Below are positions 8,089-25,727 of a DNA stretch of 64,000 nucleotides, piece by piece. Under the pieces are notes generated by a model. The model ran no database searches. It was given only the letters and a program-made list of their open reading frames with translations, and was not told the DNA's origin. Location: sequence record OQ427096.1, one strand, 5' to 3'. Both the position numbers and the translations under genes were made by a program. Every line of letters begins with the position of its first letter. Positions within the stretch are counted from its first letter, which is position 1.

Positions 8089-8089
8089 T

Positions 8090-9278: not shown

Positions 9279-9702
9279 GATTGGTATTGAAGTAGAAGGT
9301 ATGCTGCGAGGCGAGAACGTTCGCACTTATTTCTGTTCGGCTAGGGAATATGTTGATGCAGATCTTCTCAATCTCATCTACAATCTGTATGCGAACAACA
9401 TTGAGATGATCTACATTTCGGATCATCACAACGAGCTTGACCTGCATCACCTTGCAGGTGTGTTCGAAGACAGCGGTATCGGTGTTACTGTCGAATTGAC
9501 CGAGTTGACTTCTGTCCCGCCTGCAGGTGTTGAGATCTTCTGGAATGTTTCGCAGGCTTCTTATGCTCAGTCTCGTACTCTGCATTTCCTGCGTCCAACG
9601 GATCAGATCAAGATCGAGAATGAGAAACACGTTCTTGCATTCGTTGCAGGCAATGCGGTAATCACTTATCCTGAGGACTTTAATGGAGACATTGAAGTAT
9701 GA
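9271..9702 (+). CDS. Hypothetical protein in the DNA-modification cluster
   Basis: Overlap-coupled between the deacetylase and the glycosyltransferase. Confidence 0.7.
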   Translation: MAKIGIEVEGMLRGENVRTYFCSAREYVDADLLNLIYNLYANNIEMIYISDHHNELDLHHLAGVFEDSGIGVTVELTELTSVPPAGVEIFWNVSQASYAQSRTLHFLRPTDQIKIENEKHVLAFVAGNAVITYPEDFNGDIEV

Positions 9703-10859
9703 GTGAAGATTTCATGAGTGGTATGATCGACCAGATTCCGGAACAGGCAAAGCGAAATCTGTTCATCATTCCGATTGAGCCTCTGGAAGAACGATACACT
9801 GGCGAGTGGTACAAGTTCCTGCCGCCAGCATTTGCTAAGCACAATTTCAAGGTTACCCAGATTGATGGCGAGACTCTGACCGATTCGGTTGAGACTGGCG
9901 CATTCCTGGATATGAACTCGACTATCTTCTACAAGGCATCTCAGATGCAGAAGATTGCTCGTATGTTCCGTGAGAAGTCTGTGCCTCATGGTTCGGTCTT
10001 CTTTGTCAGTGACTTGGAATTCTGGGGCATTGAATCTCTGCGTCTGATGGCTCAGATCAATCAGGTCGAGATCAAGATCTATGGCTTCCTGCATGCGGCT
10101 TCGTACACCACTGAAGATGCTTTCGCAGTTGCGGCACCCTATCAGAAGTATACTGAGCTGGGCTGGCTGAAAGCTGTTGATGGCGTCTTTGTCGGTTCGC
10201 ACTATCACAAGAAGGCAGTGATGGAACGTCGTGTGAACGCGTTCGCGAATGAAGCTGACCGTCGTGAGATTGAGAAGAAGATCCACGTGAGTGGCAATCC
10301 ACTCTTCCCGAGCGCATATGACACGACTTCGGTTGGCCCGAAGAAGAACAAGATCGTGATCACCAATCGTTTCGATTCCGAGAAGCGCCCAGATCAGAGT
10401 TTGCTGGTTGCACTCCTTGTCAAGGAAGCACTGCCTGATACTGAGATTGTTCTGACGACCAGCCGCCCGACTTTCCGTTCAAATCAGAAGTGGTTGGTTG
10501 ACCTCGCTCGCATGTACGAGAAACAAGGTCTGATCACCATCAAGGAAGGACTGACCAAGAAAGAGTATCACGACGAGCTCAAGACTGCGAAGGTCATGAT
10601 CTCAAACTCTATCGAGGAAAACTTCGGTTACTGCATTGTAGAGGCTATCATGTATGACGTGGCGCCTGTACTGACTCGAGGTCTTTCGCACGTTGAAATT
10701 GTTCAGGGCTTTGACCAGTTCCTGTTCGACACCAACGACGAAGCAGTAAGTAAGGTTATCACATTCCTGCAACGCGATCAGCTTCTCAACGCGAAGCACT
10801 TCTTGGATTCTTACTTTATGGCTGCTGACTTCATGGGTCAGATCATGGCCCAAGGATGA
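9699..10859 (+). CDS. GT-B (GT4-like) glycosyltransferase
   Basis: IVITNRFDSEKRPD and EENFGYCIVEA donor-binding motifs. Confidence 0.88.
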   Translation: MSEDFMSGMIDQIPEQAKRNLFIIPIEPLEERYTGEWYKFLPPAFAKHNFKVTQIDGETLTDSVETGAFLDMNSTIFYKASQMQKIARMFREKSVPHGSVFFVSDLEFWGIESLRLMAQINQVEIKIYGFLHAASYTTEDAFAVAAPYQKYTELGWLKAVDGVFVGSHYHKKAVMERRVNAFANEADRREIEKKIHVSGNPLFPSAYDTTSVGPKKNKIVITNRFDSEKRPDQSLLVALLVKEALPDTEIVLTTSRPTFRSNQKWLVDLARMYEKQGLITIKEGLTKKEYHDELKTAKVMISNSIEENFGYCIVEAIMYDVAPVLTRGLSHVEIVQGFDQFLFDTNDEAVSKVITFLQRDQLLNAKHFLDSYFMAADFMGQIMAQG

Positions 10860-10860
10860 T

Positions 10861-12174
10861 ATGACAGATAACTACAACGGAAACGAACTCCACTACATCG
10901 CAAGCGGAACGTCTTTCATGTACATCAACTCACTCCGTCGAGATGGCGGAGTGAATGATGAAACGATTGATTGGGTACGCAACATGTTCGTAGGAGCAGA
11001 TCGTGGACCTAACAAATTCGGCATGCTGTTCAACGCGTTCACTGAATCGACCTTCGGTAAGGTGTTCAAGGAGAACTATGCTGACGTAATGTGCGACATT
11101 CACGCAGACTCAGGTGGTCTACAGATGGTGTCGCTTGGCAAGGTTGCTGATGATGCAGCTAAGCGCAAGATCTACAAGACTCAGGCTGATTACAGCACTG
11201 TGGCAATGTCGTTCGACGAAATCCCTGTCTCGCAGATCTTTGATCCGTATGCTGGACGTGGTGCAATGTCGGCGACGCGTAAGAAGGTCTTCGATCGCTC
11301 TCAGCTGAAAGCTAAGGCAATTGAATCAGGAAAGAATCTACGTGAACAGCTTGAATACTTTGCGGAAGTCGGGACGATCGCTAAGCCTATGCTTATTGCT
11401 CAAGGCAATTGTCCAGAGACCTATTATGACTGGGTTGAGTACGTCCAGGATCAGATCCCTCATGAGCTCATGGACAATATCGCAGGCGTTGCAGTCGCAA
11501 CCTCGACGCTTGGTCCTGGAGATCTAGAGAACTACGAATCGGCGTTTGTTGCTTCGCAGATGAATTTCCGTTTTGACTGCAAGCAAATCCACTTCCTGGG
11601 TGTTGGTTCGTTTGATCGTCTTGCTCCTGTTCTGGCACTAGCTAAGTCAGGCGTCTACAAGAACAAGATCATCAGCTACGACAGCACTACTCACACAGGT
11701 GGGCTTGCTCGTTCACGATTCTACACACGACGTCCTGACGGCACCTATGTTGGAACTCGTCTGTTGCAATCGGATGGATATCGCCCCCGTGATTATCAGT
11801 TCATGATGGATCACATTGGCAAGTTCAACATCGGCTTCGATGATCCGGAATCGCTCTACAAGTATTTCATCACTTGCCCGAGCTATTCTGCCGTTGAGGC
11901 AATTGGTGAGTCGCACAATCGACCATTCATTCCAAAGACAAAGATTGCTCTGTTCCGATATTCGTACGATAACTTCATCACACAGATTGAAGAGTACATG
12001 GATTCGGACGGATACATGAAGGGCATTCGTAAGGCGCACCAGCATCCTATCGCAGGTCTTGCTGAATGTCGCACTCGTTCCGACTTCAATGTCTGGCACT
12101 CGACGTTCAAGAACGTGTTGAAGTCGGACAGAGTTCGATCGAAGCAACAGAGCCTCGAAGAGCTTTTCGGTTAA
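10861..12174 (+). CDS. dpdA: TGT-fold DNA 7-deazaguanine transglycosylase (DpdA-like)
   Basis: HADSGGLQ, MSFDEIP, AQG, IHFLGVG, SYDST TGT motifs; located inside a folE/queD/queE cluster. Confidence 0.82.
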   Translation: MTDNYNGNELHYIASGTSFMYINSLRRDGGVNDETIDWVRNMFVGADRGPNKFGMLFNAFTESTFGKVFKENYADVMCDIHADSGGLQMVSLGKVADDAAKRKIYKTQADYSTVAMSFDEIPVSQIFDPYAGRGAMSATRKKVFDRSQLKAKAIESGKNLREQLEYFAEVGTIAKPMLIAQGNCPETYYDWVEYVQDQIPHELMDNIAGVAVATSTLGPGDLENYESAFVASQMNFRFDCKQIHFLGVGSFDRLAPVLALAKSGVYKNKIISYDSTTHTGGLARSRFYTRRPDGTYVGTRLLQSDGYRPRDYQFMMDHIGKFNIGFDDPESLYKYFITCPSYSAVEAIGESHNRPFIPKTKIALFRYSYDNFITQIEEYMDSDGYMKGIRKAHQHPIAGLAECRTRSDFNVWHSTFKNVLKSDRVRSKQQSLEELFG

Positions 12175-12178
12175 AGAC

Positions 12179-12217
12179 ATAGCATCCGTTGATTCACCGT
12201 CACGGATGCTATATCAT
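12179..12217 (+). promoter_or_regulatory. Sigma70-type promoter (TTGATT-N17-TATCAT) overlapped by an 11-bp inverted repeat
   Basis: ATAGCATCCGT (12179-89) / ACGGATGCTAT (12202-12); -35 at 12189-94, -10 at 12212-17; AGGAG RBS downstream. Confidence 0.55.
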
Positions 12218-12244
12218 AGTTGGACCATTTAGGAGAACCATTAG

Positions 12245-12616
12245 ATGAAAAAGATTTGGGTAACATTCCGGAAGGCAGGCTTTCACCGCTACCCAGCAGC
12301 CGGCACCCAAGGACTCGAAGACGTCGCGTACCTTGCACACCCTCACCGCCACCTGTTCCACTTCAAGGTAGCCATTGAGGTCTTCCATGACGATCGTGAG
12401 ATCGAGTTCCACCAGTTCCTCAACTTCTTGGAAGAGGCTGTTGCACTCAACGGTCTTGATTACAAGTCGTGTGAGATGATTGCAGATGATATTGCAAAGA
12501 TTGTTGCTTTGAAGTATCCTGCACTCTACCGAACCCTTGAGGTTGAAGTTTCGGAAGATGGCGAGTGCGGTGTTCATGCAATCTATGGCATCAGCAATGG
12601 CGAGGTATTCGGCTAA
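12245..12616 (+). CDS. queD: QueD-like 6-carboxytetrahydropterin synthase (T-fold)
   Basis: HPHRHLFHF, SCEMIA and VSEDGE T-fold motifs. Confidence 0.78.
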   Translation: MKKIWVTFRKAGFHRYPAAGTQGLEDVAYLAHPHRHLFHFKVAIEVFHDDREIEFHQFLNFLEEAVALNGLDYKSCEMIADDIAKIVALKYPALYRTLEVEVSEDGECGVHAIYGISNGEVFG

Positions 12617-13509
12617 TGGCACTGTTCGAAGTATCGGAAATCTTCAGCTCGTTGGAGGGTGAGGCACAATTCACCTTCCATCCGACCACCTACATTCGTT
12701 TTGCACGATGCAACTTCTCTTGTCCGTTGTTCAACAACCCTGAGAAGCTGATTGATGCAAAGGGCTACGCGCCTCTCGATTTCGATCCGAAGGACTATCA
12801 ACGTCTGGAAGATATTCCGCTGATTCACAAAGGCTGCGATAGTCAGTATGCAGTCAATCCGATCTTCGCGCACATGTGGAAGAAGTACGACACGGACGCA
12901 TTGATTGATGCTCTGTTCGAGGTTCTTCCTCAGGGTAAGCTCATCTACAGCACTGGTCTACCTCAGATCATCTCTTTGACTGGAGGTGAGCCTACTTTGA
13001 AGTGGAAGTTCATTCCGGAGATTCTGTTCCATCCTCGAATGAAAGATGCACGTCACTATCTTGTTGAGACGAACTGCTCTGTTCCGTTCAAGGACGAATT
13101 CATCAGCAACATCTACGAGTGGCTTGCACAAGACTCGCGCCGCATTTGGACATGGAGCAATTCTCCGAAGATCTCGTCCAGTGGTGAGGATCGTAAGCAA
13201 GCGATTCGCCCTGAGATTGCTCTTATGCAGCACGTTTTGACGCACAACTTCCCGGGGCGTGTCAATCAGTATTTCAAGTTCGTCGTTGATGGATCTGAGG
13301 CTGATTACGCTGAGGTGAAGGAAGTGATGGAAATCTACTACGCTGCTGGTCTGCCTCGAACTGTTCCGATCTGGATCATGCCTCAGGCTTGCACTGACGA
13401 ACAGCAGAAGGTCACCGCACGCGGAATTGCAAAGCGATGCATTGATGAAGGTTGGTTGTACTCGCACCGTGTGCAGAACGATCTCTGGGGCAATGGCGTT
13501 GGCACCTAA
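12616..13509 (+). CDS. queE: 7-carboxy-7-deazaguanine synthase (radical SAM)
   Basis: EIFSSLEGEA, RFARCNFSC...CD, SLTGGEP, VETN, SPK, KFVV, YSHRVQ; start at ATG 12616. Confidence 0.92.
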   Translation: MALFEVSEIFSSLEGEAQFTFHPTTYIRFARCNFSCPLFNNPEKLIDAKGYAPLDFDPKDYQRLEDIPLIHKGCDSQYAVNPIFAHMWKKYDTDALIDALFEVLPQGKLIYSTGLPQIISLTGGEPTLKWKFIPEILFHPRMKDARHYLVETNCSVPFKDEFISNIYEWLAQDSRRIWTWSNSPKISSSGEDRKQAIRPEIALMQHVLTHNFPGRVNQYFKFVVDGSEADYAEVKEVMEIYYAAGLPRTVPIWIMPQACTDEQQKVTARGIAKRCIDEGWLYSHRVQNDLWGNGVGT

Positions 13510-16359: not shown

Positions 16360-16404
16360 CAAGCCTAGTACTGCTAAGGGGTGTGCCAGGCTCGAGCCAG
16401 ATGA

Positions 16405-16445
16405 CCACTCAAGGTGACACCCCGGTTTCCCGGGGTGTCGAGTGG
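16405..16445 (-). terminator. Strong hairpin 3' of the AAA ATPase gene
   Basis: GACACCCCGG-GAAA-CCGGGGTGTC on the minus strand, extended by CCACTC/GAGTGG; poor U-tract. Confidence 0.55.
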
Positions 16446-16472
16446 CCTGCATTGTCAGATGTCAGTCCACTA

Positions 16473-17462
16473 TCAGAAGCCCTTGATCAGGGTCGTGTCC
16501 GCCATGTCCTTCCAGTCAGCGGCAGAGGTCTTCATGAAACCGGCGAGCTGGTTCACCGTACGGATCGAGACCGACCGCAGGCTCATCAAGTTGTCGTTCA
16601 TCCACTTGACGCACTGGTCAACCTGCTTCTGATCCAGACCGAGGTCTGCACCCAGGGTCGATTCCTTGAGGACCTGCTCGACACGAACCATGATGGCCTT
16701 CGGGTTATGGATGCACAGGTCCAGGAAGATCGACCGACTCATGAGAGCCAGAATGTGCGGAGCCAGTCGACCTTGCTTGGCGACGATGCGATCCAGGTCG
16801 AGGTTGGTGATGAAGACGATCTGGCCTTCGTACTGGAATCGGTTCGGGATATCGCTGTCTGCGAGGTACTTCGATGCCTTCGACCAGCTGATGGTCCGAA
16901 CCGCACTCGTATCCAGCGCCGCCTTCAGAATGTTCAATGCTTCTTCGTCGTAGAACACGCGATCCACGTCGTCGAGCAGCAGCACCTGGCCCTTACCTCG
17001 GTTCTTGTAGAGCGTCTCGTAGAGACCGACGGCGCTGATCGTGCCCTTGGTCGAGTCGTAGGACTTGATCTTCTTGGTGCGCTCTGCTTCTTCCAACTGG
17101 CGCTCCAAAGTGAAGGTCTTACCGACACCTGCCGAACCCGACACGATCAACGAACGAATGTTGCCGTTGACCATGCCCTGCCCGAGCTTCTCGAGCATGT
17201 TGAAGCGCTTGCGGATCATCGCAGCATCGACAGGCTTCTCAGGAACCTCGACGGCGCTGTCATCGTCATCGTCGTCATCCGAAGCAGTTGCCTGAGCCAA
17301 GCCGGCTGCCGTAATTGCCCAAAGGCCACGACCGATCTTTTCCAGCTCGCCCTCTTTAGCGCGCTTCAAATACTCTCGGTTGAACTGACCAAGTTGGCCC
17401 GTCGTGACGGTGTCGCCAAACTTCATTCTCAGTTCTTTCTTCATCGTAGCGGTGGTGCTCAT
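16473..17462 (-). CDS. AAA+ ATPase with N-terminal domain and acidic linker
   Basis: GSAGVGKT, LLLDDVD, FITN, SRS; true start ATG 17462 with AAGGA RBS. Confidence 0.88.
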   Translation of the reverse strand: MSTTATMKKELRMKFGDTVTTGQLGQFNREYLKRAKEGELEKIGRGLWAITAAGLAQATASDDDDDDDSAVEVPEKPVDAAMIRKRFNMLEKLGQGMVNGNIRSLIVSGSAGVGKTFTLERQLEEAERTKKIKSYDSTKGTISAVGLYETLYKNRGKGQVLLLDDVDRVFYDEEALNILKAALDTSAVRTISWSKASKYLADSDIPNRFQYEGQIVFITNLDLDRIVAKQGRLAPHILALMSRSIFLDLCIHNPKAIMVRVEQVLKESTLGADLGLDQKQVDQCVKWMNDNLMSLRSVSIRTVNQLAGFMKTSAADWKDMADTTLIKGF

Positions 17463-17507
17463 GATCCAGTTCCTTAAAGTGGTTTTGCCTGACATCTGAC
17501 AACCACA

Positions 17508-17609: not shown

Positions 17610-18677
17610 GTGCCGTTCTGGCTCGATCCACTAGAATTGGACGACATAAAAGTGAGGCAATTCGTCATGGGTGGCAATGCAGTTTTCAATGATCTTTCGG
17701 CTCATCCGGTCTCTATCGTCTGTCAAGACAGCAGGGATTTCTGGAGAGCAAAAATTGAGCATCTCATGCTCACAATCAACCACGTCGCACGTCGAACCCT
17801 CTGGGATATGAGTGCAGGCGCTAAGCCTTATCTTGCAGGCTCAACCAAGTTCATCTTCGATGACTTCATCCCTACAGCTGAGCTTGTCAAGTACAAGAAT
17901 TCCTTCGGTGACATTGACATTCAAATTGATGTTGAGAAGGGAGCCGACTTGATGTCTGTCCTCAATCTTATTAGCGCAAATGAATGTGCAAATGAGTTCC
18001 AGATTGTTGGTTGGCAGCACACGGTAGACACAATCGTGACCATGTGGTACGATGAAGATGTGCAGCAGACGTTCCAAGTTGATTTTGAGCTCGTCGAATT
18101 TGCAAACGACCGCCCTACGAACTGGTCGAGGTTCAGTCGATCGAGCTCTTGGGAAGACACCTGCGCCGGAATCAAGGGTTTCGCTCACAAGTATATCTTC
18201 CGGGCGATCACTGCTATCTGGCTCAGAGAAGCACAGGTTCAACTCAAGACAAAGTTCGTCACAAAAAATATCAGCCCTATCGTGTTCAGTCCGAAGGGTG
18301 CTCGAGTGAAGTGGCGAGAGATTCGTCCGGACGTCTGGCAAGAGATTCCTATGGACGAGGAAGCTCTAATCAAGAACGTCGAAGACCTGTTCAAGCTATT
18401 CTTCAAGGTCAAGCCAGATGCCGAGTCAACCTGTGAGATGTATTCTTATCAGGGTGTCGTCAATCTGATCCTCACCTGGATTGACAAGGAAGATCATCTT
18501 AAGATCGCCGCAGGTATGCGCAATCTTCTTTGGGGTCCGTATGCTCAGAAGCTGTACCGAGACAATCCTGCACGAGACTTCTATGAAAAGGGTCAGGCTT
18601 ATTTGTATCTGACAGAGACTCTGGGAATCCCGGTCGAGCCCTTCTTCGGATCGGAGAAATACTATGAGACGTATTGA
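17610..18677 (+). CDS. DNA pol-beta-superfamily nucleotidyltransferase
   Basis: AGS...FGDIDIQI and FQVDF (GS, DxD, third Asp). Confidence 0.72.
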   Translation: MPFWLDPLELDDIKVRQFVMGGNAVFNDLSAHPVSIVCQDSRDFWRAKIEHLMLTINHVARRTLWDMSAGAKPYLAGSTKFIFDDFIPTAELVKYKNSFGDIDIQIDVEKGADLMSVLNLISANECANEFQIVGWQHTVDTIVTMWYDEDVQQTFQVDFELVEFANDRPTNWSRFSRSSSWEDTCAGIKGFAHKYIFRAITAIWLREAQVQLKTKFVTKNISPIVFSPKGARVKWREIRPDVWQEIPMDEEALIKNVEDLFKLFFKVKPDAESTCEMYSYQGVVNLILTWIDKEDHLKIAAGMRNLLWGPYAQKLYRDNPARDFYEKGQAYLYLTETLGIPVEPFFGSEKYYETY

Positions 18678-19681
18678 TGGCGTTCTTCAAGACGATTGAT
18701 TTCCTCAAAAGAAACAACGCGGCTATTCTTATCAACATCGTCTTGGCAAAGGACGTCATGACGATTGGTAAGAAGGTCGACGGTGAAAGAGTTGTGGTTG
18801 AGGCTTTGATGCTCGGTGACAAGCCATCCGAGAGTGAGGAAGAGCTGACCCAATATTGTCTTACAGTGAAAGGTTCACCTCCAGCACTCTGGGCACTCGA
18901 CAATTGGTTCCCTGTGACACGGTTCTTCAAGGATCCCAGGTTCGTTCCAAAGTCAACCATCAAGGGAACACCTGAGGTACGCGATAAGGAGTTCCAGCAG
19001 AGGCAAGAGAAGTCATTAGTTGACGTCATCAACAAATGGAGTCAACCGATCAAGCTGGAAAACTTCCACATCAAACGAGCCGAACAGGCTCCTGAGATTG
19101 GACCACACGGAAAAGAGAACCTAGTTGATGTCGTGGTATGGGACGAACACAATTTTTCGTATAATGTGAGCTGTAAGATGTCTAAGGCAGCTGACCTTGG
19201 CTCCGGTGGCATTGCTGGATTGCAGAAGTCGGTTCCTGAGTTGGTGACCAAACTCTACTATCAAGTCAAGATTGATCTGTATGAGTTAGGTTTCGAGGAA
19301 GGGAAGGTGTACGATATTCGTAACATCCCGACTGTGATGTACGGTATTCCGGACATCTACGCATACAAGATGTTCGCCGGATCAGATGAGGTTGGTGGCA
19401 AGATTGATTTCATCTACGTTGGACCCGATCAGGTTGATTACAATGGTGAGGAGTTCAACGGCAAGTTCTGGCCAGTGGAAGAGTATGCTAAGAAGAAGCC
19501 ATACTACCTGCGGCTGAGAAAGAGAGACGTTCATGCGAACATGGTTCGCATCAACTTCACTAAGCTCAACTCACACGGACTTCCTTGCATTTTCACAACA
19601 GGATTGGGCGACTTTGCAGCAGCCCGTTTCGTAATTGATGATAGAGTGCCACCTAAGGCAACTGTGAGGCAACTATGCTAG
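18674..19681 (+). CDS. Putative PD-(D/E)XK nuclease
   Basis: RQEKSL helix, LVDVV, NVSCKM. Confidence 0.55.
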   Translation: MMAFFKTIDFLKRNNAAILINIVLAKDVMTIGKKVDGERVVVEALMLGDKPSESEEELTQYCLTVKGSPPALWALDNWFPVTRFFKDPRFVPKSTIKGTPEVRDKEFQQRQEKSLVDVINKWSQPIKLENFHIKRAEQAPEIGPHGKENLVDVVVWDEHNFSYNVSCKMSKAADLGSGGIAGLQKSVPELVTKLYYQVKIDLYELGFEEGKVYDIRNIPTVMYGIPDIYAYKMFAGSDEVGGKIDFIYVGPDQVDYNGEEFNGKFWPVEEYAKKKPYYLRLRKRDVHANMVRINFTKLNSHGLPCIFTTGLGDFAAARFVIDDRVPPKATVRQLC

Positions 19682-20535
19682 TAGCAGAGAAGAAGCGGAA
19701 GAACATGAAGCACTTCCGAGAAATGAATGATAGAGTGTTCTGTGAATGGATCCTTGGCTATGAAGTCGATCAGCTTGATCTAAGTTGGAAGCTCGACGGA
19801 TTCTTCCTCAGGTTCGGAAAGGACAAAGAGAACAAACCTTGGTTCCAGACTGCGCGCTCTCCTGTACTCTATGATCCAATGGAGATTATCTGGCACTCGC
19901 TTGAGAAAGGTTATGATCACACAGGCATGAGTCGAGCTGAGGTCTATTTCCACCTTATCAAGACAATTTGGGATTCGAACATCATGAATCACTTGCCAGA
20001 AGACTCTGGGTTCGAGTGTGAAGTGTTCGACAAGTCGATGTCTGTCTTGAACAGGGAGAACAACACCAGAACGTTCGTGAACATTCCGTACGACGAAGAG
20101 TTCTTTAAGACAGATCTCACGTTGGCTATCTACAAGCTCATTGAGGCAGCAACAGCTGAGACATGGATTGATGGGTACTACTGTGACCTGAATCTAGACG
20201 ACAACATCCAGACATTTGGCACTCGTTTCAAGATTGACTTCACCGCGAAATACTACTTTGAGTGTGGTGTCAAAGGCATCACAGGCAACGGAAAGCTTCT
20301 TCCTATTCTGGAATCTCGCCGCCAGGCAGATAGAGAAACCAAACTTGGAATGAAGGCAGTGATCGCAACACTCAAAGATCAATTCTGTTACTATGTCTTG
20401 AAGCAGGCTCAAGATCATCACAAGATGGGAAAGAATTTCGAAGGGGTTGTCATCACCGTAAATAAGACAGAGTATAAAATTGTCACAGACTACTTCCGAG
20501 ACTTGATCTACTTCAAGGGAGTGATGGGTGGATAA
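19675..20535 (+). CDS. ATP-dependent ligase-fold (RNA ligase-like) nucleotidyltransferase
   Basis: Motif I SWKLDG, motif III FECEV, motif IV FEGVVI, motif V YKIV. Confidence 0.72.
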   Translation: MLVAEKKRKNMKHFREMNDRVFCEWILGYEVDQLDLSWKLDGFFLRFGKDKENKPWFQTARSPVLYDPMEIIWHSLEKGYDHTGMSRAEVYFHLIKTIWDSNIMNHLPEDSGFECEVFDKSMSVLNRENNTRTFVNIPYDEEFFKTDLTLAIYKLIEAATAETWIDGYYCDLNLDDNIQTFGTRFKIDFTAKYYFECGVKGITGNGKLLPILESRRQADRETKLGMKAVIATLKDQFCYYVLKQAQDHHKMGKNFEGVVITVNKTEYKIVTDYFRDLIYFKGVMGG

Positions 20536-21016
20536 TTTTGACTTGTTCTTCGGAAGGTTCCAGCCGGTTCACAGTGGACATCTTGCTGTTCTCGAGAGGA
20601 TGAACAACCCTGTTGTCGTCATCGTCAAAGGAAAGGTGTCATCGAAGGACACGGAGAAGAACCCTTTCGACTTCGCCTATCAGAAGATGCTTCTAGAGAA
20701 GGTGAAGCCTGATGTTAGGGTGTTCCAGTCAGAGACTGGATATCTCCCGGACATTATCAAGATGCTTGGTGATTGTCCTGATGCTGTCTACTGCGGTTCC
20801 GATCGCATTGGACAGTACAAGGCGCAGATGGAACGCGCCAACAAAGAGCTTGATGAGCTGTGTCTCGTCAGGTTCATTGAAACGGAGCGTGTGACATCTG
20901 CTTCCGTTGTTCGTGAGGCCATCCGGTCTGGCGATAGAAAAGCCTTTAAGGCCAATGTCCCTAGAGCAATCTGGGATCAGTACTCAACAATGAAAAAGAG
21001 GTTAGAAAATGGTTGA
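20528..21016 (+). CDS. Small HxGH cytidylyl/adenylyltransferase-like protein
   Basis: FGRFQPVHSGH, KNPF, GSDR, SASVVR. Confidence 0.85.
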   Translation: MDNFDLFFGRFQPVHSGHLAVLERMNNPVVVIVKGKVSSKDTEKNPFDFAYQKMLLEKVKPDVRVFQSETGYLPDIIKMLGDCPDAVYCGSDRIGQYKAQMERANKELDELCLVRFIETERVTSASVVREAIRSGDRKAFKANVPRAIWDQYSTMKKRLENG

Positions 21017-21239
21017 CTTGACAGTAACTATTCCGTCGTTCGAAGACTTCCTGGCAGAAGATGCAAAGGCAATCTCGGATGCAAATCATCACAGGAAGAA
21101 TGGCGACGGCGAAGGCTGCGACTTGAAGCCTGTTGTTTCGGACAAGGGCTCGACCACTCCAGAAGTGATTGAGAAGTCGGACAATGCTGCACCTGGCGAC
21201 GACAATGGCGAAACTCTGCCTAAGCCACCGGTGAGCTAA
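21009..21239 (+). CDS. Probable internal head protein
   Basis: SFEDFLAE capsid-targeting-like motif. Confidence 0.55.
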   Translation: MVDLTVTIPSFEDFLAEDAKAISDANHHRKNGDGEGCDLKPVVSDKGSTTPEVIEKSDNAAPGDDNGETLPKPPVS

Positions 21240-21240
21240 G

Positions 21241-22131
21241 ATGAGCGAAGGCGCCAACGTAACTGCAGGTGTGGCGAATCCAGACAACGTCATGCCGCCC
21301 GAGAAGCCACAGAAGCGGAAGGGAGAAGGAGAGTTCGCAAAGGAAATCAATGCGGCTGTCTCACAGGCTGGTAAGAAGCTGGTAGAGTCTCTGTTGGAAG
21401 CGAAGGCGCCTAAGCAATTTGGCTTGGGCGACAAAGTAAAACTCAACGGCAAGCCTGGGCGAATCACTTCGGTTGTCAGCACGACAGCTGAAGATGGTAA
21501 TCCAGGGACTCACTGGAAGGTATCTATCAGGTACGAAGATGGCAAGGAAAAGACTTACATGTCTAACCGTGCCAAGATCGTTGTGGTAGAGAAGCACCCT
21601 CAGTACAACAAGCAAGCAGAATGGCATCAAAAGGATGCTATGGCAGCTAAGCGTGGTGCAGACTACACTCGTCATCACTCTGAGATGGCCAAGTACCATG
21701 ATACCATGGTCAAGCATCACGACTACGAAGGCAACACTGAAGAAGCAGACAAGCACCGCGAAGCAGCTGTGACGCATCGTGCTGAATCTGAGAAGCGTGC
21801 TAAGGAAGCCGCAGCAGGTGGAGGCTTTGTAACCAAGCGTGAGATGCAGTCCAAGCAACAGCAAGCCTATCGCAACCATGTAGCTGACGAACGCGAAAAG
21901 AAGCGACAGTGGGAAGAAGCTCGTAAGACAGCGGCGGCTAATCGCAAGTCCTACAAGCACTACTACTCTGTTCCTTTCGCTGACAAGGATGAAGCTAAGT
22001 CGAAGGGATTCAAGTGGGATCCAAACGAGAAGAAGTGGTACGTTACTTCTCAATTCCCGAAGCCAGGCACAATGAAGTGGAAGGCTTCGCACTCCGTCGA
22101 TGAAAAGACAGGAAAGAAAGTCGATGATTGA
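21241..22131 (+). CDS. Probable internal head protein with SH3/KOW-like, His-rich and DUF5710-like segments
   Basis: SLLE cleavage-like site; FGLGDKVKLNGKPGRI; VPFADKDEAKSKGFKWDPNEKKWY. Confidence 0.6.
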   Translation: MSEGANVTAGVANPDNVMPPEKPQKRKGEGEFAKEINAAVSQAGKKLVESLLEAKAPKQFGLGDKVKLNGKPGRITSVVSTTAEDGNPGTHWKVSIRYEDGKEKTYMSNRAKIVVVEKHPQYNKQAEWHQKDAMAAKRGADYTRHHSEMAKYHDTMVKHHDYEGNTEEADKHREAAVTHRAESEKRAKEAAAGGGFVTKREMQSKQQQAYRNHVADEREKKRQWEEARKTAAANRKSYKHYYSVPFADKDEAKSKGFKWDPNEKKWYVTSQFPKPGTMKWKASHSVDEKTGKKVDD

Positions 22132-22540
22132 TTTCGATACATGGTTGTACGAAGATCTCAAAGTTCCCAACGCCAAGGATGGCAAAGGGAAAATGCGTCA
22201 TGGTATGCCACAGCTTACGCAGTTTGATGCGTTCATGGCAGACCTAAAAGACAACGACATTAGCACAGAGATCAAGTCGTTGAGTCCATGGAAGTTGAAG
22301 CCTACACAGAGCAACTTCAATGAGGATAAGGTCGACTTCCTGATCTCGAGTGCTAAGTGGGAAGCGAAGCCTATAATTACAAGTGCCGACAACTATGTCG
22401 TAGATGGGCATCATCGCTGGTTGGCGGCAGCAAAGTTCGGGAAGAAGATTCAATCAAGAGTCATTGGCATGGAGTGCGATGACCTGTTGAAGTTCCTCAA
22501 GGGCAAATCCTATGTTGAAACAAAGACAATTAACGAGTGA
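22124..22540 (+). CDS. ParB/Sulfiredoxin-like domain protein
   Basis: LKPTQ...PII.S.DNYVVDGHHRWLAA; N-terminal FDTWLYE. Confidence 0.8.
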   Translation: MIDFDTWLYEDLKVPNAKDGKGKMRHGMPQLTQFDAFMADLKDNDISTEIKSLSPWKLKPTQSNFNEDKVDFLISSAKWEAKPIITSADNYVVDGHHRWLAAAKFGKKIQSRVIGMECDDLLKFLKGKSYVETKTINE

Positions 22541-22545
22541 TGTGA

Positions 22546-23328
22546 ATGGCGCTTCGAACCCCTGCACCAATTAGATTTTCTCTGGAGATTCCAGAGCTAA
22601 ACAAGACGATCTCTTATCGCGCCCTTAAGGTCGGTGAGCAGAAGTCTCTGTTGACTGTTCTTGAGCTGAAGGATGCTTCAGCGATCATCAACACGATTGT
22701 AGACATCATTGATGGCATTACGTTTGGCGAGCTTGATCTTGCTAAGACGCCTATGCATCTCATTGACTTCATCTTCCTGCACGCATACATCAAGTCGTCA
22801 GGTGCTCGCTCAAAGGCTGAGTACACCTGTGGTGGCGAGATTGAAGTAGAAGAGGAAGTCGAGCTCGAGGAAGGCAAGAAGGAAATTGTCACCAAGACTG
22901 TTCCTTGTGGATCCAGGCACGAACTGCTCCTCAATCTCGAGAATGCCACGATTAAATATCCAGAAGGATATAAGGCTTCTAAGCTGGTACAGATCGATGA
23001 CTCGATGTCTATCAAACTGAAGATGCCTGACTTCGCCAGCTTCAAGAAGCTCGACCTAGACGCAGACGTCATTGGTATCTCAGACCAGTACATCTTCTCT
23101 GGCATTGAGTACATTCTTGATGGCGAGAACATGTCTGTCCCGGGTGCGGATTTCGACTTCGATGAAATGACGACTTGGCTCAACGAACTGCCTTCCACGG
23201 CGCTTGATCAGATCACGGAATTCTTCGAAGGCGTTCCTGTCCTGTCCCTTAATGTGGACGTGACTTGCCCTAAGTGCGGCAGGAAGGATGGTTTCGAGCT
23301 TCAAGGGCTCGACGATTTTTTCCTGTAA
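22546..23328 (+). CDS. gp26: Baseplate hub assembly protein (T4 gp26-like)
   Basis: YRALKVGEQK.LL, LHAYIKSSG, CxxC near the end, C-terminal GLDDFF. Confidence 0.82.
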   Translation: MALRTPAPIRFSLEIPELNKTISYRALKVGEQKSLLTVLELKDASAIINTIVDIIDGITFGELDLAKTPMHLIDFIFLHAYIKSSGARSKAEYTCGGEIEVEEEVELEEGKKEIVTKTVPCGSRHELLLNLENATIKYPEGYKASKLVQIDDSMSIKLKMPDFASFKKLDLDADVIGISDQYIFSGIEYILDGENMSVPGADFDFDEMTTWLNELPSTALDQITEFFEGVPVLSLNVDVTCPKCGRKDGFELQGLDDFFL

Positions 23329-23501: not shown

Positions 23502-25727
23502 ATGCTTCCAGCACTTCTAAGAACAGTTGGTTCTTCATTGTTGAGATCAGAGGCGGTTAGTGCAGGTGCTAACCGCCTTGTCGTCGCTTCGAGACTCAAC
23601 AAGGTCGCAGGTAACAAGCTAGTCCAAGGACTTGCGAAACACTCTGGAGCTTCCAAAGTTCCGGCGCTGGATAAGATTGGTAGTTATCTTAGCAAGGTTC
23701 CTTCAGGAAAAGAGAAGGAAAAGAAAGAACGTGGTACATCCACTTCTTCATCTTCTAAGAACCGTGATAAGGCCCGTGATGATGCTGCCAAGAATCAAGA
23801 GCGTCAAGACAAGGCTGAGAAGGAATCCCTAGGTGTACAGGAAGAGAATGCAAGCCTTCTAAAGGTCATTGCAAAGGACACTGTACGCGTCCGTGATGCG
23901 GTCGAGGCCCTGGCTAAGAACGGTGTCGGTGGAGGCGCGGGCGGTGATGGAATGATGGACAAGCTGCTCAAGACCATCACTTCTCTGCCAGCACTGCTCC
24001 CTTCTCTTCTCACTGGTCCTGCAGGCAAACTTGGCGGCTTTGTAACCAAGTTTGCATCTAAGATTCCTGGCGTTGGAAGACTCATGGGGTCAATCGGAGG
24101 CATGGGTAAGGCAGGCGAAGCTGCAACGACTGTAGCTCGTGCGGGTGTAGCTGCGGAAGCAACTGCGGCAAGAGCAGGAGCCGCTGCTGTTGGACGACAT
24201 GCTCTCCGCGATCCCAAGACGGGTCGATTCATTGCACGTAGCGCAGTACAAGCCGCCGAGGTTGCTCCAAAGGGCATTCTGGCTAAGGCTGGTGCAGCTG
24301 CTGCGGGTGTTGGTGGTGCAAAGATTGCAGGTAAGGCAACAGGCGCAATTGGTAAGGGCATCGCAAAGACGGCAGGTAAGTCTCTACTCAAGAAGATTCC
24401 TATCATTGGTGCAATCGCAGGTCTTGGTCTGGCAGCAAACCGAGCATACGCTGGTGACTGGACAGGTGCAGGACTCGAAGCAGCTTCTGGTCTTGCAGGA
24501 ACTATTCCTGGTATTGGTACAGCTGCAAGTCTTGGTCTTGACGCGGCTATCCTTGCGCGCGACCTTAAGAATGACGGAAGTTCGACACCTGCTGTAACCG
24601 CAGCAGCCAAGCCAGTTACTGCATCCAAGCCTCCGGTGCACACGGCTGCAATTGCAGCTGCTCCAGTGGTAGCGCAACGCAAAACCGCGGCAGCGACTGA
24701 CTCCATGCAGGTCACTATGGCGAAGATGCTTGATGTGATGACTGACCGCTCCAAGGGCATCTACATCGTTCCTGCTGAGGTTGGAGCATCCACTCTTCAG
24801 ACTCGCTCGCCTTATAACCCTCAGGGTGTTCCAACAGGAAACAAATACGAGCCAATCGTCAGTGCAAGTCCATATGATTCAGCACCAAGCAGCATCGGTC
24901 CCGCTACGGCAGGTCGTACAATGGGTGAGGGAACATCCGTAACCTCCGGTCAGACAATGCGAGGCGGTCGTGTTGAGATTGGTCCAACGGGAAACTTTGA
25001 ACGAGATCTTCTCAATCAGATTGCAGCAGGTGAGGCAGGTAAGGAAGGCTACGACTCGGTATGGAGTGGTTCTCGTGTCAAGCCAACCAAGCCTGTGTCT
25101 CAGATGACATTCGGCGAAGTGATGCAGTGGCAGCGTGATACGCTCAACGAACAAAAGAGCCGAGGCATCCCAGCAAATCGTCGTAGTTCCGCAGTAGGAC
25201 GTTACCAGTTCATCAGTAGTACACTCAAGGCGCAGATGGCTGCGGCAGGATTTAAGGAAGATGATCTGTTCAATACTGAGAATCAGGATAAGCTCGCTCT
25301 TACTCTGATGAACCAGGGTGGCAACCTTGACAAGTTCAAGTCGGGTAGAATCTCAGCGGAGAAGTTCCAAGATTACATTGCATCACAGTGGGCATCACAA
25401 AAGACAGCAAGCGGAGCAGGCATGTATAATGCTGCAGGCTTCAACCATGCAGGTCACAGCTCACTTGGATTCTTGAAGGCAGCTCAAGCGTCAGGTTCTC
25501 TGACGGCATCCTCAGGTTCTCCAACTGCAATGGTAAGAGATGCTGCACAGCAGAAGCAAGCCGCACGTATGGCGCCGATCGTTGTCAGCGCTCCTACACA
25601 GGTCGTTCAAAACGGGCAAAAGGAAGCCGCTGCTCCAAGAACAACGGCTTCGGCAACACCTGTGATTGTGCGTAATCCGGACTCGCCGGTTCGCTCCTAC
25701 GTACTATCGCAAATCAGGACTTCTTGA
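23502..25727 (+). CDS. Tail hub / tape-measure-like protein with lysozyme-like domain
   Basis: Long A/G-rich region; QIAAGE...AVGRYQF...QDKLA muramidase-like motifs; follows gp26/gp51. Confidence 0.7.
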   Translation: MLPALLRTVGSSLLRSEAVSAGANRLVVASRLNKVAGNKLVQGLAKHSGASKVPALDKIGSYLSKVPSGKEKEKKERGTSTSSSSKNRDKARDDAAKNQERQDKAEKESLGVQEENASLLKVIAKDTVRVRDAVEALAKNGVGGGAGGDGMMDKLLKTITSLPALLPSLLTGPAGKLGGFVTKFASKIPGVGRLMGSIGGMGKAGEAATTVARAGVAAEATAARAGAAAVGRHALRDPKTGRFIARSAVQAAEVAPKGILAKAGAAAAGVGGAKIAGKATGAIGKGIAKTAGKSLLKKIPIIGAIAGLGLAANRAYAGDWTGAGLEAASGLAGTIPGIGTAASLGLDAAILARDLKNDGSSTPAVTAAAKPVTASKPPVHTAAIAAAPVVAQRKTAAATDSMQVTMAKMLDVMTDRSKGIYIVPAEVGASTLQTRSPYNPQGVPTGNKYEPIVSASPYDSAPSSIGPATAGRTMGEGTSVTSGQTMRGGRVEIGPTGNFERDLLNQIAAGEAGKEGYDSVWSGSRVKPTKPVSQMTFGEVMQWQRDTLNEQKSRGIPANRRSSAVGRYQFISSTLKAQMAAAGFKEDDLFNTENQDKLALTLMNQGGNLDKFKSGRISAEKFQDYIASQWASQKTASGAGMYNAAGFNHAGHSSLGFLKAAQASGSLTASSGSPTAMVRDAAQQKQAARMAPIVVSAPTQVVQNGQKEAAAPRTTASATPVIVRNPDSPVRSYVLSQIRTS

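What the first reader, a model, noticed from the sequence alone, without database searches (positions are those of the whole stretch)
17610..21016. Four-gene nucleotide-transfer block: pol-beta NTase + PD-(D/E)XK nuclease + ligase-fold NTase + HxGH transferase
Seen: four overlap-coupled ORFs carrying three unrelated nucleotidyltransferase folds (GS/DxD; KxDG-E-EG-K; HxGH) and one nuclease fold, followed directly by probable internal head proteins. I know of no described pathway that combines them. Inference: a nucleic-acid end-healing/sealing or tailing system (tRNA or DNA repair against anticodon nucleases), a signalling-nucleotide synthesis or decoy system, or an injected anti-defence module.
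Basis: partly seen in the sequence, partly recalled or inferred. Interest (0 to 1): 0.74.

Follow-up and report, generated by a model that had tools for sequence, protein, structure and literature searches.

The report
Conserved three-nucleotidyltransferase phage module
A Xanthomonas phage carries a chain of coupled genes for three different nucleotide-transferring enzymes plus a nuclease-like protein; in dozens of other large phages the three enzymes are fused into one protein, so they form a real, widespread, uncharacterised machine that most likely mends or marks nucleic-acid ends.

Summary
The window is Xanthomonas phage X1, a 200-kb T4-like myovirus. The four ORFs exist and are translationally coupled, but the chain runs on through three more genes to the baseplate hub.

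- g3 has a ligase-type nucleotidyltransferase fold without an OB domain. This is supported by a confident model, Foldseek probability 1.0 to T4 Rnl2 and Naegleria RNA ligase, and conserved motifs I, III, IIIa, IV and V.
- g4 is an HxGH transferase, closest to archaeal and NadM-type NMN adenylyltransferases.
- g1 has invariant GS, DxD and D/E motifs and a matching predicted topology. No profile or structure search linked it to a known Pol-beta enzyme.
- g2 is weakly restriction-endonuclease-like.

The decisive result is linkage. Of 156 cluster representatives that contain g3, 41 are single proteins ordered g1-g3-g4 with all three motif sets intact. Eight are g3-g4, six are g1-g3, and one is g3-g4-ParB.

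g2 never occurs in a fusion, and unrelated proteins take its place in related phages. It does sit beside a g3 homologue again in phage PA5oct.

The best reading is a nucleic-acid, probably RNA, end-repair or end-modification module. Its function is untested and the role of the HxGH enzyme is unexplained.

The parts
17667..18677 (+). g1, 336 aa: probable Pol-beta-superfamily nucleotidyltransferase (phrog_19290, function unknown). It is the N-terminal domain of the fused g1-g3-g4 proteins.
   Evidence: G58-S59, D82-x-D84, Q137-x-D139-x-E141, K170 and Q294 are invariant in 20 diverse homologues. The AF2 helix/strand order of the homologous domain in P0050 fits the minimal NTase core. It is fused N-terminal to g3 in 47 proteins. 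No Pfam or PDB match was found.
18677..19681 (+). g2, 334 aa: restriction-endonuclease-like (PD-(D/E)XK variant D...S-x-K) protein. It is a variable accessory of the module.
   Evidence: The AF2 model has pLDDT 87. The Foldseek top hits are MspI, HinP1I, HhaI and MGME1, with E 0.014-0.13. E111, D151, S165 and K167 are invariant in 28 sequences. It never occurs in a fusion. It is duplicated in L006 and lies next to a g3 homologue in PA5oct.
19675..20535 (+). g3, 286 aa: ligase/capping-superfamily covalent nucleotidyltransferase domain without an OB domain. It is RNA-ligase-like.
   Evidence: Motifs I (K39xDG), III (E116), IIIa (F134 V135..Y139), IV (E256 G257) and V (K268) are conserved. Foldseek gives probability 1.0 to T4 Rnl2, NgrRnl, Rnl1, Rnl3 and the Trl1 adenylyltransferase domain. 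The family comprises 236 clusters among 1.84 billion representatives. No Pfam family matches.
20528..21016 (+). g4, 162 aa: HxGH (cytidylyltransferase-like) nucleotidyltransferase, closest to archaeal/NadM-type NMN adenylyltransferases and to PPAT.
   Evidence: Pfam PF01467 matches at E 1e-6, above the cut-off. The NCBIfam NMNAT models match only the N-terminal ~55 aa and score far below their cut-offs. The family profile against PDB gives MJ0541/NMNAT at E 7.5e-9 and PPAT at 8e-6. g4 is fused after g3 in 50 proteins.
21009..21239 (+). g5, 76 aa: small acidic ORF coupled to g4. Its role is unknown.
   Evidence: It overlaps g4 by 8 nt. No family matches. A small ORF occupies the same position in Moby (gp052).
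21241..22131 (+). g6, 296 aa: lysine/glutamate-rich protein with a C-terminal DUF5710 domain. Its role is unknown, and it is absent from Moby at this position.
   Evidence: Pfam PF18974 matches at E 3e-10, residues 239-271. The translation is, and the synteny comparison is.
22124..22540 (+). g7, 138 aa: solo DdrB-like ParB/sulfiredoxin-fold protein (DGHHR motif). It is the fourth conserved partner of the module.
   Evidence: It is 50% identical to Moby gp053. It is fused C-terminal to g3-g4 in P0046 and in phrog_3041. tblastn hits the ParB part of DarB-like polyvalent proteins and proteins annotated as virion-associated or structural.

Best explanation
Shown: g1, g3 and g4 form one conserved functional unit. 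Here it is split into translationally coupled genes; elsewhere it is a single polypeptide in the fixed order Pol-beta-like NTase, ligase-type NTase, HxGH NTase. A ParB-like protein (g7) is a frequent fourth partner and a restriction-endonuclease-like protein (g2) is a lineage-specific accessory.

Inferred: the unit works on the ends of a nucleic acid, most likely broken RNA such as tRNA, in the manner of RlaP-plus-RNA-ligase repair systems.
- g2 would trim or clean the break.
- g1 would add one or a few nucleotides to the 3'-OH end.
- g3 would self-adenylylate on Lys39, activate the 5'-phosphate end and seal it.
- g4, the least explained part, would make or regenerate an adenylyl-containing dinucleotide (an NAD-like donor or cofactor) used by its fused neighbour, or adenylylate a phosphorylated end directly.
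- g7 may bind the nucleic acid or act as an NTP-dependent end-processing enzyme.

The module is expressed together with the baseplate-hub genes. It may act early in infection against host RNA-cleaving defences. Whether it travels in the virion is open.
For: Fusion and synteny:
- 41 proteins have the architecture g1-g3-g4, 8 are g3-g4, 6 are g1-g3 and 1 is g3-g4-g7. The linker between g1 and g3 has a median of 34 aa. KxDG, EG and HxGH are present in 41/41 triple fusions and GS..DxD in 39/41.
- The same gene order is found in Moby, L006 and L009, between the gp41 helicase and the gp26 hub.
- g1 and g4 show the same pattern of phage groups in 50,697 records: Stenotrophomonas 16, Campylobacter 15 and Xanthomonas 2 for both, with Vibrio 6 versus 3.

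Ligase character of g3:
- g3 has a ligase fold. By target-normalised TM-score its best fits are RNA-ligase NTase domains (T4 Rnl2 0.46, NgrRnl 0.39).
- There is no OB domain after motif V, as in RNA ligases and unlike DNA ligases or capping enzymes.

Precedent:
- Pol-beta NTases of the RlaP family associate with RNA ligases in phages. They add 1-2 NMP to RNA 3'-OH ends before ligation (PMC7824862; bioRxiv 10.64898/2025.12.29.696909).

Context:
- A nuclease-like g2 is adjacent to a g3 homologue in two distant lineages.
- X1 carries 34 tRNA genes and separate DNA and RNA ligases, so g3 is not the replicative ligase (PMC13384950).
Against: - No activity, substrate or expression datum exists for any member.
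- g1 has no detectable similarity to RlaP (PF10127) or to any solved NTase.
- No kinase, phosphatase or 2H phosphoesterase is part of the conserved unit. These are the usual healing enzymes of RNA repair.
- An HxGH transferase has no known role in RNA repair, so the model does not explain one third of the fusion.
- X1 already has an RNA ligase.
- The module lies among replication and baseplate genes and next to a DNA-binding-type ParB domain, which fits a DNA substrate equally well.
Confidence: 0.4

Rival explanations
1. DNA-end or nick processing of the phage genome. The ligase-type g3 would seal or 5'-adenylylate DNA ends. g1 would act as a terminal transferase. g2 would be a DNA endonuclease and g7 a DNA-binding ParB. 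The module would protect or repair incoming or replicating DNA, for example after restriction cuts.
For: g2's nearest structures are type II restriction endonucleases and MGME1. g7 belongs to the DdrB-like ParB group, which is predicted to act on DNA or NTPs (PMC5512222). The module sits between the helicase, primase and baseplate genes. DNA ligases also appear among the g3 fold hits, e.g. LigIV at E 9e-4.
Against: g3 lacks the OB domain that DNA ligases use to encircle duplex DNA. X1 has its own DNA ligase. g2 and g7 are the least constant members. The HxGH enzyme is no better explained.
Confidence: 0.2
2. Nucleotide-metabolite module. g4 would make NAD+ or another adenylylated dinucleotide. 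g3 and g1 would make or consume nucleotide signals such as dinucleoside polyphosphates or oligonucleotides. The purpose would be to restore a depleted cofactor or to jam host nucleotide-based immunity.
For: The g4 family is closest to NMN adenylyltransferases. Phage NAD+ salvage by HIGH-superfamily NTases is known (PMC9503650). Giant fused versions carry further effector-type domains: Amidoligase_2, a T7-like kinase and a second NTase.
Against: The match to NMNAT covers only the ATP-binding N-terminal ~60 residues and scores far below the equivalog cut-offs (33.9 versus 127 bits). No NadV-type partner was seen in the stretches examined around the block. The first His of HxGH is replaced in the Campylobacter, Vibrio and cyanophage versions. 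All known ligase-fold enzymes act on polynucleotide ends.
Confidence: 0.15
3. RNA 5'-end marking. g3 would act like a capping enzyme, g4 would supply or attach an NAD-like dinucleotide cap, g2 would be a DXO-like cap-editing nuclease and g1 a 3'-tailing polymerase. Together they would form a phage-encoded RNA cap and tail system.
For: g3 belongs to the ligase/capping superfamily, and capping enzymes appear among the hits (rank 34, rank 37). g4 is NMNAT-like. DXO1 appears among the weak g2 hits (ranks 17 and 27).
Against: Capping enzymes carry an OB domain that g3 lacks. The DXO1 hits have probability at most 0.06. g2 is dispensable to the module. No methyltransferase or triphosphatase is associated.
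Confidence: 0.08
4. Accessory enzymes of the neighbouring 7-deazaguanine DNA-modification pathway, or of another DNA-hypermodification pathway.
For: FolE, a PAPS-reductase-like protein, DpdA and QueE lie 4-10 kb upstream in X1. QueC, DpdA and QueE lie upstream in Moby. In L009, Tet/JBP and a P-loop nucleotide kinase lie downstream of the module. Firehammervirus phages, which carry g1 and g4, encode radical-SAM and amidinotransferase genes near g1.
Against: KVP40-like Vibrio phages have DpdA but gave no g1 or g4 hits. The T4-like cyanophage locus examined, PA5oct, and the jumbo-phage contigs L007/L008 carry g3-g4 or the triad with no DpdA in the stretches examined. The co-location is explained by shared T4-like synteny between helicase and hub.
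Confidence: 0.04

Closest known systems
RlaP (PF10127) Pol-beta nucleotidyltransferase paired with RNA ligase (phage and bacterial RNA-repair operons; T4 NrdC.11 is an RlaP)
   Same: A Pol-beta-type NTase is tightly associated with an OB-less ligase-type enzyme. It occurs in large phages with many tRNA genes. The predicted logic is to add nucleotides to a damaged 3' end and then seal.
   Different: g1 shows no sequence match to PF10127. The association here is a covalent fusion. A third, HxGH, transferase is an obligatory partner. No RtcB, RtcA, PNK or 2H healing enzyme is part of the unit.
T4 Rnl2, Naegleria NgrRnl (Rnl5), T4 Rnl1 and archaeal Rnl3 RNA ligases
   Same: They share the nucleotidyltransferase fold with motifs I, III, IIIa, IV and V and lack an OB domain.
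   Different: Identity is only 11-14%. No Pfam RNA-ligase family matches. g3 ends one helix after motif V, so it has none of the C- or N-terminal substrate-binding domains that define Rnl1-Rnl5. It carries a helical insert between motifs IIIa and IV.
Trifunctional healing-and-sealing enzymes (bacterial Pnkp of the Pnkp-Hen1 system; fungal/plant tRNA ligase Trl1)
   Same: Three catalytic domains, including a ligase-type adenylyltransferase, are fused in one polypeptide that acts on nucleic-acid ends. The Trl1 adenylyltransferase domain is among the fold hits (rank 46).
   Different: The partner domains there are a kinase and a phosphoesterase. Here both partners are nucleotidyltransferases.
Phage NAD+ salvage adenylyltransferases NadM and NadR (HIGH superfamily)
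   Same: g4 shares the GRFQP-x-H-x-GH type N-terminal motif and its best PDB and NCBIfam matches with archaeal/NadM NMNAT.
   Different: g4 has no Nudix or kinase fusion. No NadV partner was seen in the stretches examined. Scores are far below the equivalog cut-offs. g4 is fused instead to a ligase-type domain.
DdrB-like ParB domains and polyvalent virion-delivered effector proteins of phages (Iyer et al. 2017, PMC5512222)
   Same: g7 matches the ParB part of DarB-like polyvalent proteins. Like the solo forms described, it lies beside virion structural genes. Giant g1-g3-g4 proteins carry further effector-like domains.
   Different: The ligase-type and HxGH domains are not among the domains found in the passages of that paper read here. 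Packaging of g1, g3 or g4 has not been shown. The PA5oct g3 and g2 homologues lack the virion mass-spectrometry note that their neighbours carry.

Membership tests
Pol-beta superfamily nucleotidyltransferases (g1) | hG[GS] motif followed by a [DE]x[DE] strand and a third acidic residue on a later strand | tested here: met
   G58-S59, D82-x-D84 and D139/E141 are invariant in 20 diverse homologues. A GS..DxD pattern is present in 39 of 41 triple fusions.
Pol-beta superfamily nucleotidyltransferases (g1) | Significant profile or structure match to an established member | tested here: not met
   There is no Pfam hit at E up to 10 for 20 members. PDB sequence searches gave no hit. The Foldseek top 50 for the fused model were all ligases apart from two low-probability SpoT hits. 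The g1 domain could not be searched on its own.
Pol-beta superfamily nucleotidyltransferases (g1) | alpha-beta-alpha-beta-alpha-beta-beta core topology | tested here: inconclusive
   The secondary-structure order of the AF2 model of P0050, residues 43-169, is compatible. No superposition was possible.
RlaP, PF10127 (g1) | Match to the PF10127 model | tested here: not met
   Searches gave no match.
RlaP, PF10127 (g1) | Genomic association with an RNA-ligase-type gene | tested here: met
   g1 is fused to g3 in 47 proteins and adjacent or near-adjacent to it in X1, BUDD, Moby, L006 and L009.
RlaP, PF10127 (g1) | Adds 1-2 NMP to RNA 3'-OH ends | not testable with these tools
   This is a biochemical property, known for PfRlaP and PaRlaP only (bioRxiv 10.64898/2025.12.29.696909).
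Covalent nucleotidyltransferases: polynucleotide ligases and capping enzymes (g3) | Motif I KxDG lysine plus motifs III, IIIa, IV and V in order | tested here: met
   K39, D41, G42, E116, F134, V135, Y139, E256, G257 and K268 are each conserved in 82-89% of 176 sequences.
Covalent nucleotidyltransferases: polynucleotide ligases and capping enzymes (g3) | Nucleotidyltransferase-domain fold | tested here: met
   The AF2 model has pLDDT 91. Foldseek gives probability 0.99-1.0 to T4 Rnl2, NgrRnl, Rnl1, Rnl3 and ASFV ligase, with E about 1e-3. Phage RNA ligases appear in BFVD.
DNA ligases / mRNA capping enzymes (g3) | C-terminal OB-fold domain after motif V | tested here: not met
   X1 g3 ends 18 residues after K268. 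The model shows a single helix after the motif IV/V strands.
Named RNA ligase families Rnl1-Rnl5 (g3) | Family-specific flanking domain and a match to the family model | tested here: not met
   There is no Pfam, NCBIfam or PHROG ligase match and no PDB sequence match.
HxGH / cytidylyltransferase-like superfamily, PF01467 (g4) | Pfam match above the gathering score, the (H/T)xGH motif and the C-terminal S-x-[ST]-x-x-R motif | tested here: met
   The score is 29.5 bits against a cut-off of 21. H15, G17, H18, S124, S126 and R129 are conserved in 90-100% of 52 sequences.
NMN adenylyltransferase equivalogs (g4) | Full-length match above the curated cut-off | tested here: not met
   The best score is 33.9 bits against a cut-off of 127, covering residues 6-60 only. 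The PDB profile match is also limited to about 60 N-terminal positions.
PD-(D/E)XK nucleases (g2) | Core fold with D...(D/E/S/N/Q)xK catalytic residues on adjacent strands | tested here: inconclusive
   D151 and S165-x-K167 are invariant in 28 sequences. The top 11 Foldseek hits are all PD-(D/E)XK enzymes, but with E 0.014-0.13 and probability at most 0.66. No Pfam match was found.
DdrB-like ParB/Srx domains (g7) | ParB/Srx motif with a conserved arginine, and similarity to the ParB domain of polyvalent DarB/DdrB-type proteins | tested here: met
   The DGHHR motif is conserved with Moby gp053. tblastn gives E 1e-7 to DarB-like proteins of Burkholderia and Ralstonia phages. The Pfam ParBc_2 match is only sub-threshold.
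T4-type internal head proteins (g5, g6) | Homology to IPI-III or Alt-type proteins, an N-terminal capsid-targeting sequence and a prohead-protease site | tested here: not met
   No family match other than DUF5710 was found. Targeting and cleavage signals were not tested.

The most novel reading that the evidence does not exclude
The g1-g3-g4 triad may be a previously undescribed, widely distributed phage machine in which three mechanistically different nucleotidyltransferases act in sequence on one polynucleotide. For example, it could install a non-canonical adenylylated or NAD-like 5' end and a 3' tail on phage or host RNA or DNA. It may be carried into the cell with the virion. The ligase-like and NMNAT-like pair would then be a near-core, so far unrecognised, function of marine T4-like cyanophages.
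Probability: 0.12. Interest if true: 0.85.

Novelty: new variant of a known kind. Interest (0 to 1): 0.62.

Why it matters
The work turns four "hypothetical" or loosely named phage genes into a defined, testable unit. That unit is an obligate trio of nucleotidyltransferases with three different folds, found as one protein in at least 41 sequence clusters and as an operon in T4-like phages of Xanthomonas and Stenotrophomonas. In Vibrio and Campylobacter phages g1 is a separate gene and g3 and g4 are fused.

A probable distant relative of the ligase-like gene, always annotated as hypothetical, sits next to the "cytidyltransferase" gene in the cyanophage examined (S-RIM50). It gave matches in 468 phage records, nearly all T4-like cyanophages.

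If the module repairs or marks RNA ends, it would add a new branch to phage counter-defence against RNA-cleaving immunity. It would also give the HxGH superfamily a first role linked to a polynucleotide ligase. Finally, it corrects the annotation of these "cytidyltransferases" as simple metabolic enzymes.

Tried and rejected
1. Pfam, NCBIfam, PADLOC and PHROGs scans of g1, g2 and g3 gave no named family. The only hit was phrog_19290, of unknown function, for g1.
2. PDB sequence searches with single proteins and with family profiles for g1, g2 and g3 returned chance-level hits only.
3. hhalign of the g1 family against the second NTase-like domain of P0089/P0090 and against the DUF6267 part of P0054 showed no relation.
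4. g2 was compared with the proteins in the same slot in Moby and L009, and those two with each other. None are related, so the slot is variable.
5. A link to the 7-deazaguanine cluster was rejected. DpdA relatives occur in KVP40-like phages that gave no triad hits, and triad or g3-g4 carriers examined show no DpdA in the stretches read.
6. T4-type late promoter TATAAATA: no copies in the window. The sigma-70 scan scored below the shuffled expectation. No timing inference is possible.
7. The fused model was used to cover g1 and g3 in one structure job. The cost was that ligase hits filled the Foldseek PDB list, so g1 could not be placed structurally.
8. Burroughs & Aravind 2016 (PMC5062991), the primary RlaP paper, is not held in the library. 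Whether it already lists this triad could not be checked.
9. I considered g3 as the phage's main DNA ligase and rejected it, because X1 has annotated DNA and RNA ligases elsewhere.

Full report
IDENTITY AND ANATOMY. The window is 100% identical to Xanthomonas phage X1 (OQ427096.1, 200,058 bp; record coordinate = window + 62,000). X1 is a T4-like myovirus of X. campestris. Phage BUDD is 85% identical over this stretch. The four ORFs of the finding are annotated CDSs there. Homologue lengths and a GAGG upstream place the g1 start at ATG 17667 rather than GTG 17610, and the g2 start at ATG 18677. The genes are g1 17667-18677, g2 18677-19681, g3 19675-20535 and g4 20528-21016. The coupled chain does not stop there. 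It continues with g5 21009-21239, g6 21241-22131 (DUF5710) and g7 22124-22540, then the gp26-like baseplate hub at 22546-23328. Junctions are -1, -7, -8, -8, +1, -8 and +5 nt. None of the genes is interrupted. Upstream lie a DnaB/gp41-type helicase and a 7-deazaguanine gene set. One minus-strand gene separates them from g1.

FOLD ASSIGNMENTS.
- g4 is a bona fide HxGH transferase. It matches Pfam PF01467 above the cut-off, and H15-x-G17-H18, G90-x-D92 and S124-x-S126-x-x-R129 are conserved in its family. A profile of ten diverse family members is closest to archaeal and NadM-type NMN adenylyltransferases (E 7.5e-9) and next to PPAT. The match covers only the ATP-binding N-terminal ~60 positions, and the NCBIfam equivalog cut-offs are missed by a wide margin. 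The acceptor substrate is therefore unknown.
- g3 has no Pfam, NCBIfam or PDB sequence match. Its family nevertheless conserves motif I (K39-x-D41-G42), III (E116), IIIa, IV (E256-G257) and V (K268). An AlphaFold model of a natural g1-g3 fusion (P0050, 43-sequence alignment, mean pLDDT 91) hits polynucleotide ligases almost exclusively. Probability is 1.0 for T4 Rnl2, Naegleria NgrRnl, T4 Rnl1, an archaeal Rnl3 and ASFV ligase. The target-normalised TM-score is highest for the T4 Rnl2 adenylyltransferase domain. The protein ends one helix after motif V, so it has no OB domain. It therefore resembles RNA ligases rather than DNA ligases or capping enzymes.
- g1 (phrog_19290, unknown function) has invariant G58-S59, D82-x-D84 and D139/E141. 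Its predicted helix/strand order fits the minimal Pol-beta nucleotidyltransferase core. No profile, PDB or hhalign search tied it to any known member, RlaP/PF10127 included. I rate the Pol-beta assignment probable, not shown.
- g2 was modelled at pLDDT 87. Its eleven best structural matches are all PD-(D/E)XK enzymes (MspI, HinP1I, HhaI, MGME1), at weak scores of E 0.014-0.13. D151 and S165-x-K167 are invariant, a variant of the motif consistent with those restriction enzymes.

LINKAGE, THE MAIN RESULT. A profile of the g3 family searched against 1.84 billion representative proteins found 236 clusters, and the best 150 were returned. Local HMMs of g1, g2, g3, g4 and g7 were mapped onto all proteins fetched.
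- Of 156 g3-containing representatives, 100 have g3 alone, 41 are g1-g3-g4, 8 are g3-g4, 6 are g1-g3 and one is g3-g4-g7.
- The order never varies.
- The g1-g3 linker has a median of 34 residues.
- KxDG, motif IV and HxGH are present in 41/41 triple fusions, and GS..DxD in 39/41.
- The fused proteins range from 724 to 2,078 residues.
- Their tails sometimes carry further effector-type domains (Amidoligase_2 and a second NTase-like domain). The adjacent 1,616-residue protein in L008 has Amidoligase_2 and a T7-like protein kinase domain.
- They lie on phage-like contigs of up to 179 kb.

Split versions keep the same order and position, between the gp41 helicase and the gp26 hub. This holds in Stenotrophomonas Menderavirus phages (Moby gp048, gp050, gp051, gp053), in metagenomic contig L006 and in L009. 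Campylobacter Firehammervirus (CP220 gp100 plus gp026) and Vibrio phiKT1024-type phages have g1 as a separate gene and g3-g4 fused. In the 50,697-record phage collection, g1 and g4 hit the same groups: Stenotrophomonas 16, Campylobacter 15 and Xanthomonas 2 for both, and Vibrio 6 versus 3.

STATUS OF g2. g2 is absent from every fusion. Proteins with no detectable similarity fill its slot in Moby and L009, and two paralogues fill it in L006. In the unrelated jumbo phage PA5oct, however, the g2 homologue EST35_0229 directly follows EST35_0228. That protein is a clear g3 homologue (E 5e-14 in a ten-sequence search) and also a structural match of the fused model. g2 is thus a recurrent but dispensable partner of the ligase-like enzyme, not part of the core.

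DOWNSTREAM GENES AND THE VIRION QUESTION. g7 is a solo ParB/sulfiredoxin-fold protein with a DGHHR motif.
- It is 50% identical to Moby gp053.
- It is fused behind g3-g4 in P0046 and in phrog_3041.
- It is similar to the ParB part of DarB-like polyvalent proteins.
- Its homologues are annotated as virion-associated or structural in several phages.

This matches the DdrB-like ParB domains described as solo proteins beside virion genes (PMC5512222). g5 and g6 are charged proteins with no family link other than DUF5710, and nothing supports calling them internal head proteins.

Evidence for packaging of the enzymes themselves is mixed. A cyanophage "cytidylyltransferase" has been reported in virion proteomes, with the authors' own caveat (PMC10665884); I did not verify that this ORF belongs to the g4 family. 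The PA5oct g3 and g2 homologues lack the ESI-MS/MS note that nearly all their neighbours carry.

WIDER REACH. In cyanophage S-RIM50 a 299-aa hypothetical protein (gp063) matches the g3 HMM weakly (E 2.4e-5 in a ten-sequence search). It has a K-x-D-G motif in register, although hhalign with the narrow eight-sequence profile was not significant. It is followed by a "cytidyltransferase" with a clear g4 domain (E 7e-19), again downstream of the gp41 helicase. That gp063 family occurs in 468 phage records, nearly all T4-like cyanophages, and is annotated as hypothetical in every listed record. Cyanophage "cytidyltransferase-like" proteins are also structural matches of the fused model. I treat the cyanophage link as probable.

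MECHANISM.
Shown:
- g1, g3 and g4 form one selected unit with all three active sites intact.
- g3 is an OB-less ligase-type enzyme.
- g4 is an HxGH transferase.

Inferred:
- All known enzymes of the g3 fold act on polynucleotide 5' ends through a lysyl-NMP intermediate.
- The best-documented partner of OB-less ligases in large phages is a Pol-beta NTase (RlaP) that restores 3' nucleotides before sealing (PMC7824862; bioRxiv 10.64898/2025.12.29.696909).
- The most economical model is therefore an end-repair or end-modification machine for RNA, with g2 as a trimming nuclease.

The model does not explain why an NMNAT-like enzyme is an obligatory third domain, and it lacks the usual kinase and phosphoesterase healing enzymes. 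I put it at 0.4. The rivals are DNA-end processing (0.2), nucleotide cofactor or signal metabolism (0.15), RNA 5'-end marking (0.08) and a role in DNA hypermodification (0.04).

The last rival was tested by distribution and weakened. DpdA relatives occur in KVP40-like phages that gave no g1 or g4 hits, and triad or g3-g4 carriers examined show no DpdA in the stretches read.

COMPARISON AND NOVELTY. The module works most like RlaP-plus-RNA-ligase repair pairs and, in architecture, like trifunctional healing/sealing enzymes (Pnkp, Trl1). It is not a member of RlaP or of Rnl1-Rnl5, and it is not a DNA ligase, a capping enzyme or an NMNAT equivalog: each failed a defining feature tested here. The X1 genome paper lists only an "adenylyltransferase family protein" among host-metabolism genes (PMC13384950). 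I found no description of the triad in the papers I could read. The primary RlaP survey (PMC5062991) was not available, so prior mention there cannot be excluded. I class the module as a new variant of a known kind.

LIMITS. There are no functional or expression data. The g1 fold was not placed structurally, because ligase hits filled the hit list for the two-domain model. E-values from my local HMM searches refer to very small target sets.

Noticed in passing
window 7405-13509 (+): This is a 7-deazaguanine DNA-modification gene set: GTP cyclohydrolase I (7405-8088), a PAPS-reductase-family protein (8090-8623), a DpdA-type transglycosylase (10861-12174) and QueE (12616-13509). X1 DNA probably carries a 7-deazaguanine base. 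The published X1 description files these under host metabolism.
   Followed up: partly
window 16473-17462 (-): This is the only minus-strand gene in a long plus-strand array, in a stretch with higher GC (0.528) and reversed GC skew. It has weak AAA/STAND-type P-loop hits and a possible N-terminal winged-helix domain. The 364-aa plus-strand ORF 16383-17477 is a shadow of it.
   Followed up: partly
window 33507-37694 (+): The record annotates this as a 1,395-aa ADP-ribosyltransferase. It may be an Alt-like or polyvalent virion effector. It was not examined.
   Followed up: no
window 23502-25727 (+): This 741-aa protein follows the hub gene. It has peptidase and lysozyme-type PHROG hits. Its counterpart in L006 carries a VgrG3-like C-terminal domain, so it is likely the cell-puncturing or lysozyme hub protein.
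   Followed up: no
L010:3984-5495 (CP220 gp026), L003:10477-11931 (phiKT1024), L012:4752-5909 (S-RIM50 gp062): In these g4 domains the first histidine of HxGH is replaced (T-x-G-H or a more degenerate form), while the second His, the G-x-D-R motif and the C-terminal motif region persist. This could mean a changed nucleotide specificity or partial loss of activity.
   Followed up: partly
L011:4660-7020 (PA5oct EST35_0228 and EST35_0229): A g3-like protein (446 aa, with an unexplained ~150-aa C-terminal part of g4 size) and a g2 homologue sit together inside a block of mass-spectrometry-confirmed structural genes. They are not themselves flagged as detected.
   Followed up: partly
L007:10001-16237 and L008:10001-17517: The giant g1-g3-g4 protein of L007 continues into an Amidoligase_2 domain, a second NTase-like domain and DUF6934. 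In L008 the g1-g3-g4 protein is followed by a 1,616-aa protein with Amidoligase_2 and T7-like protein-kinase domains. The contigs also encode ClpB, DnaJ, peptide deformylase and PhoH.
   Followed up: partly
L009:13017-18582: In this T4-like contig the module is followed by ADDT, inositol-1-phosphate synthase, a P-loop nucleotide kinase and a Tet/JBP dioxygenase. This is a thymidine or cytosine hypermodification set, in place of the 7-deazaguanine set of X1.
   Followed up: no
P0054 (650 aa): A g3 domain is fused to Pfam DUF6267 (E 5e-35). DUF6267 showed no relation to g1 by hhalign, and no paper in the library mentions it.
   Followed up: partly
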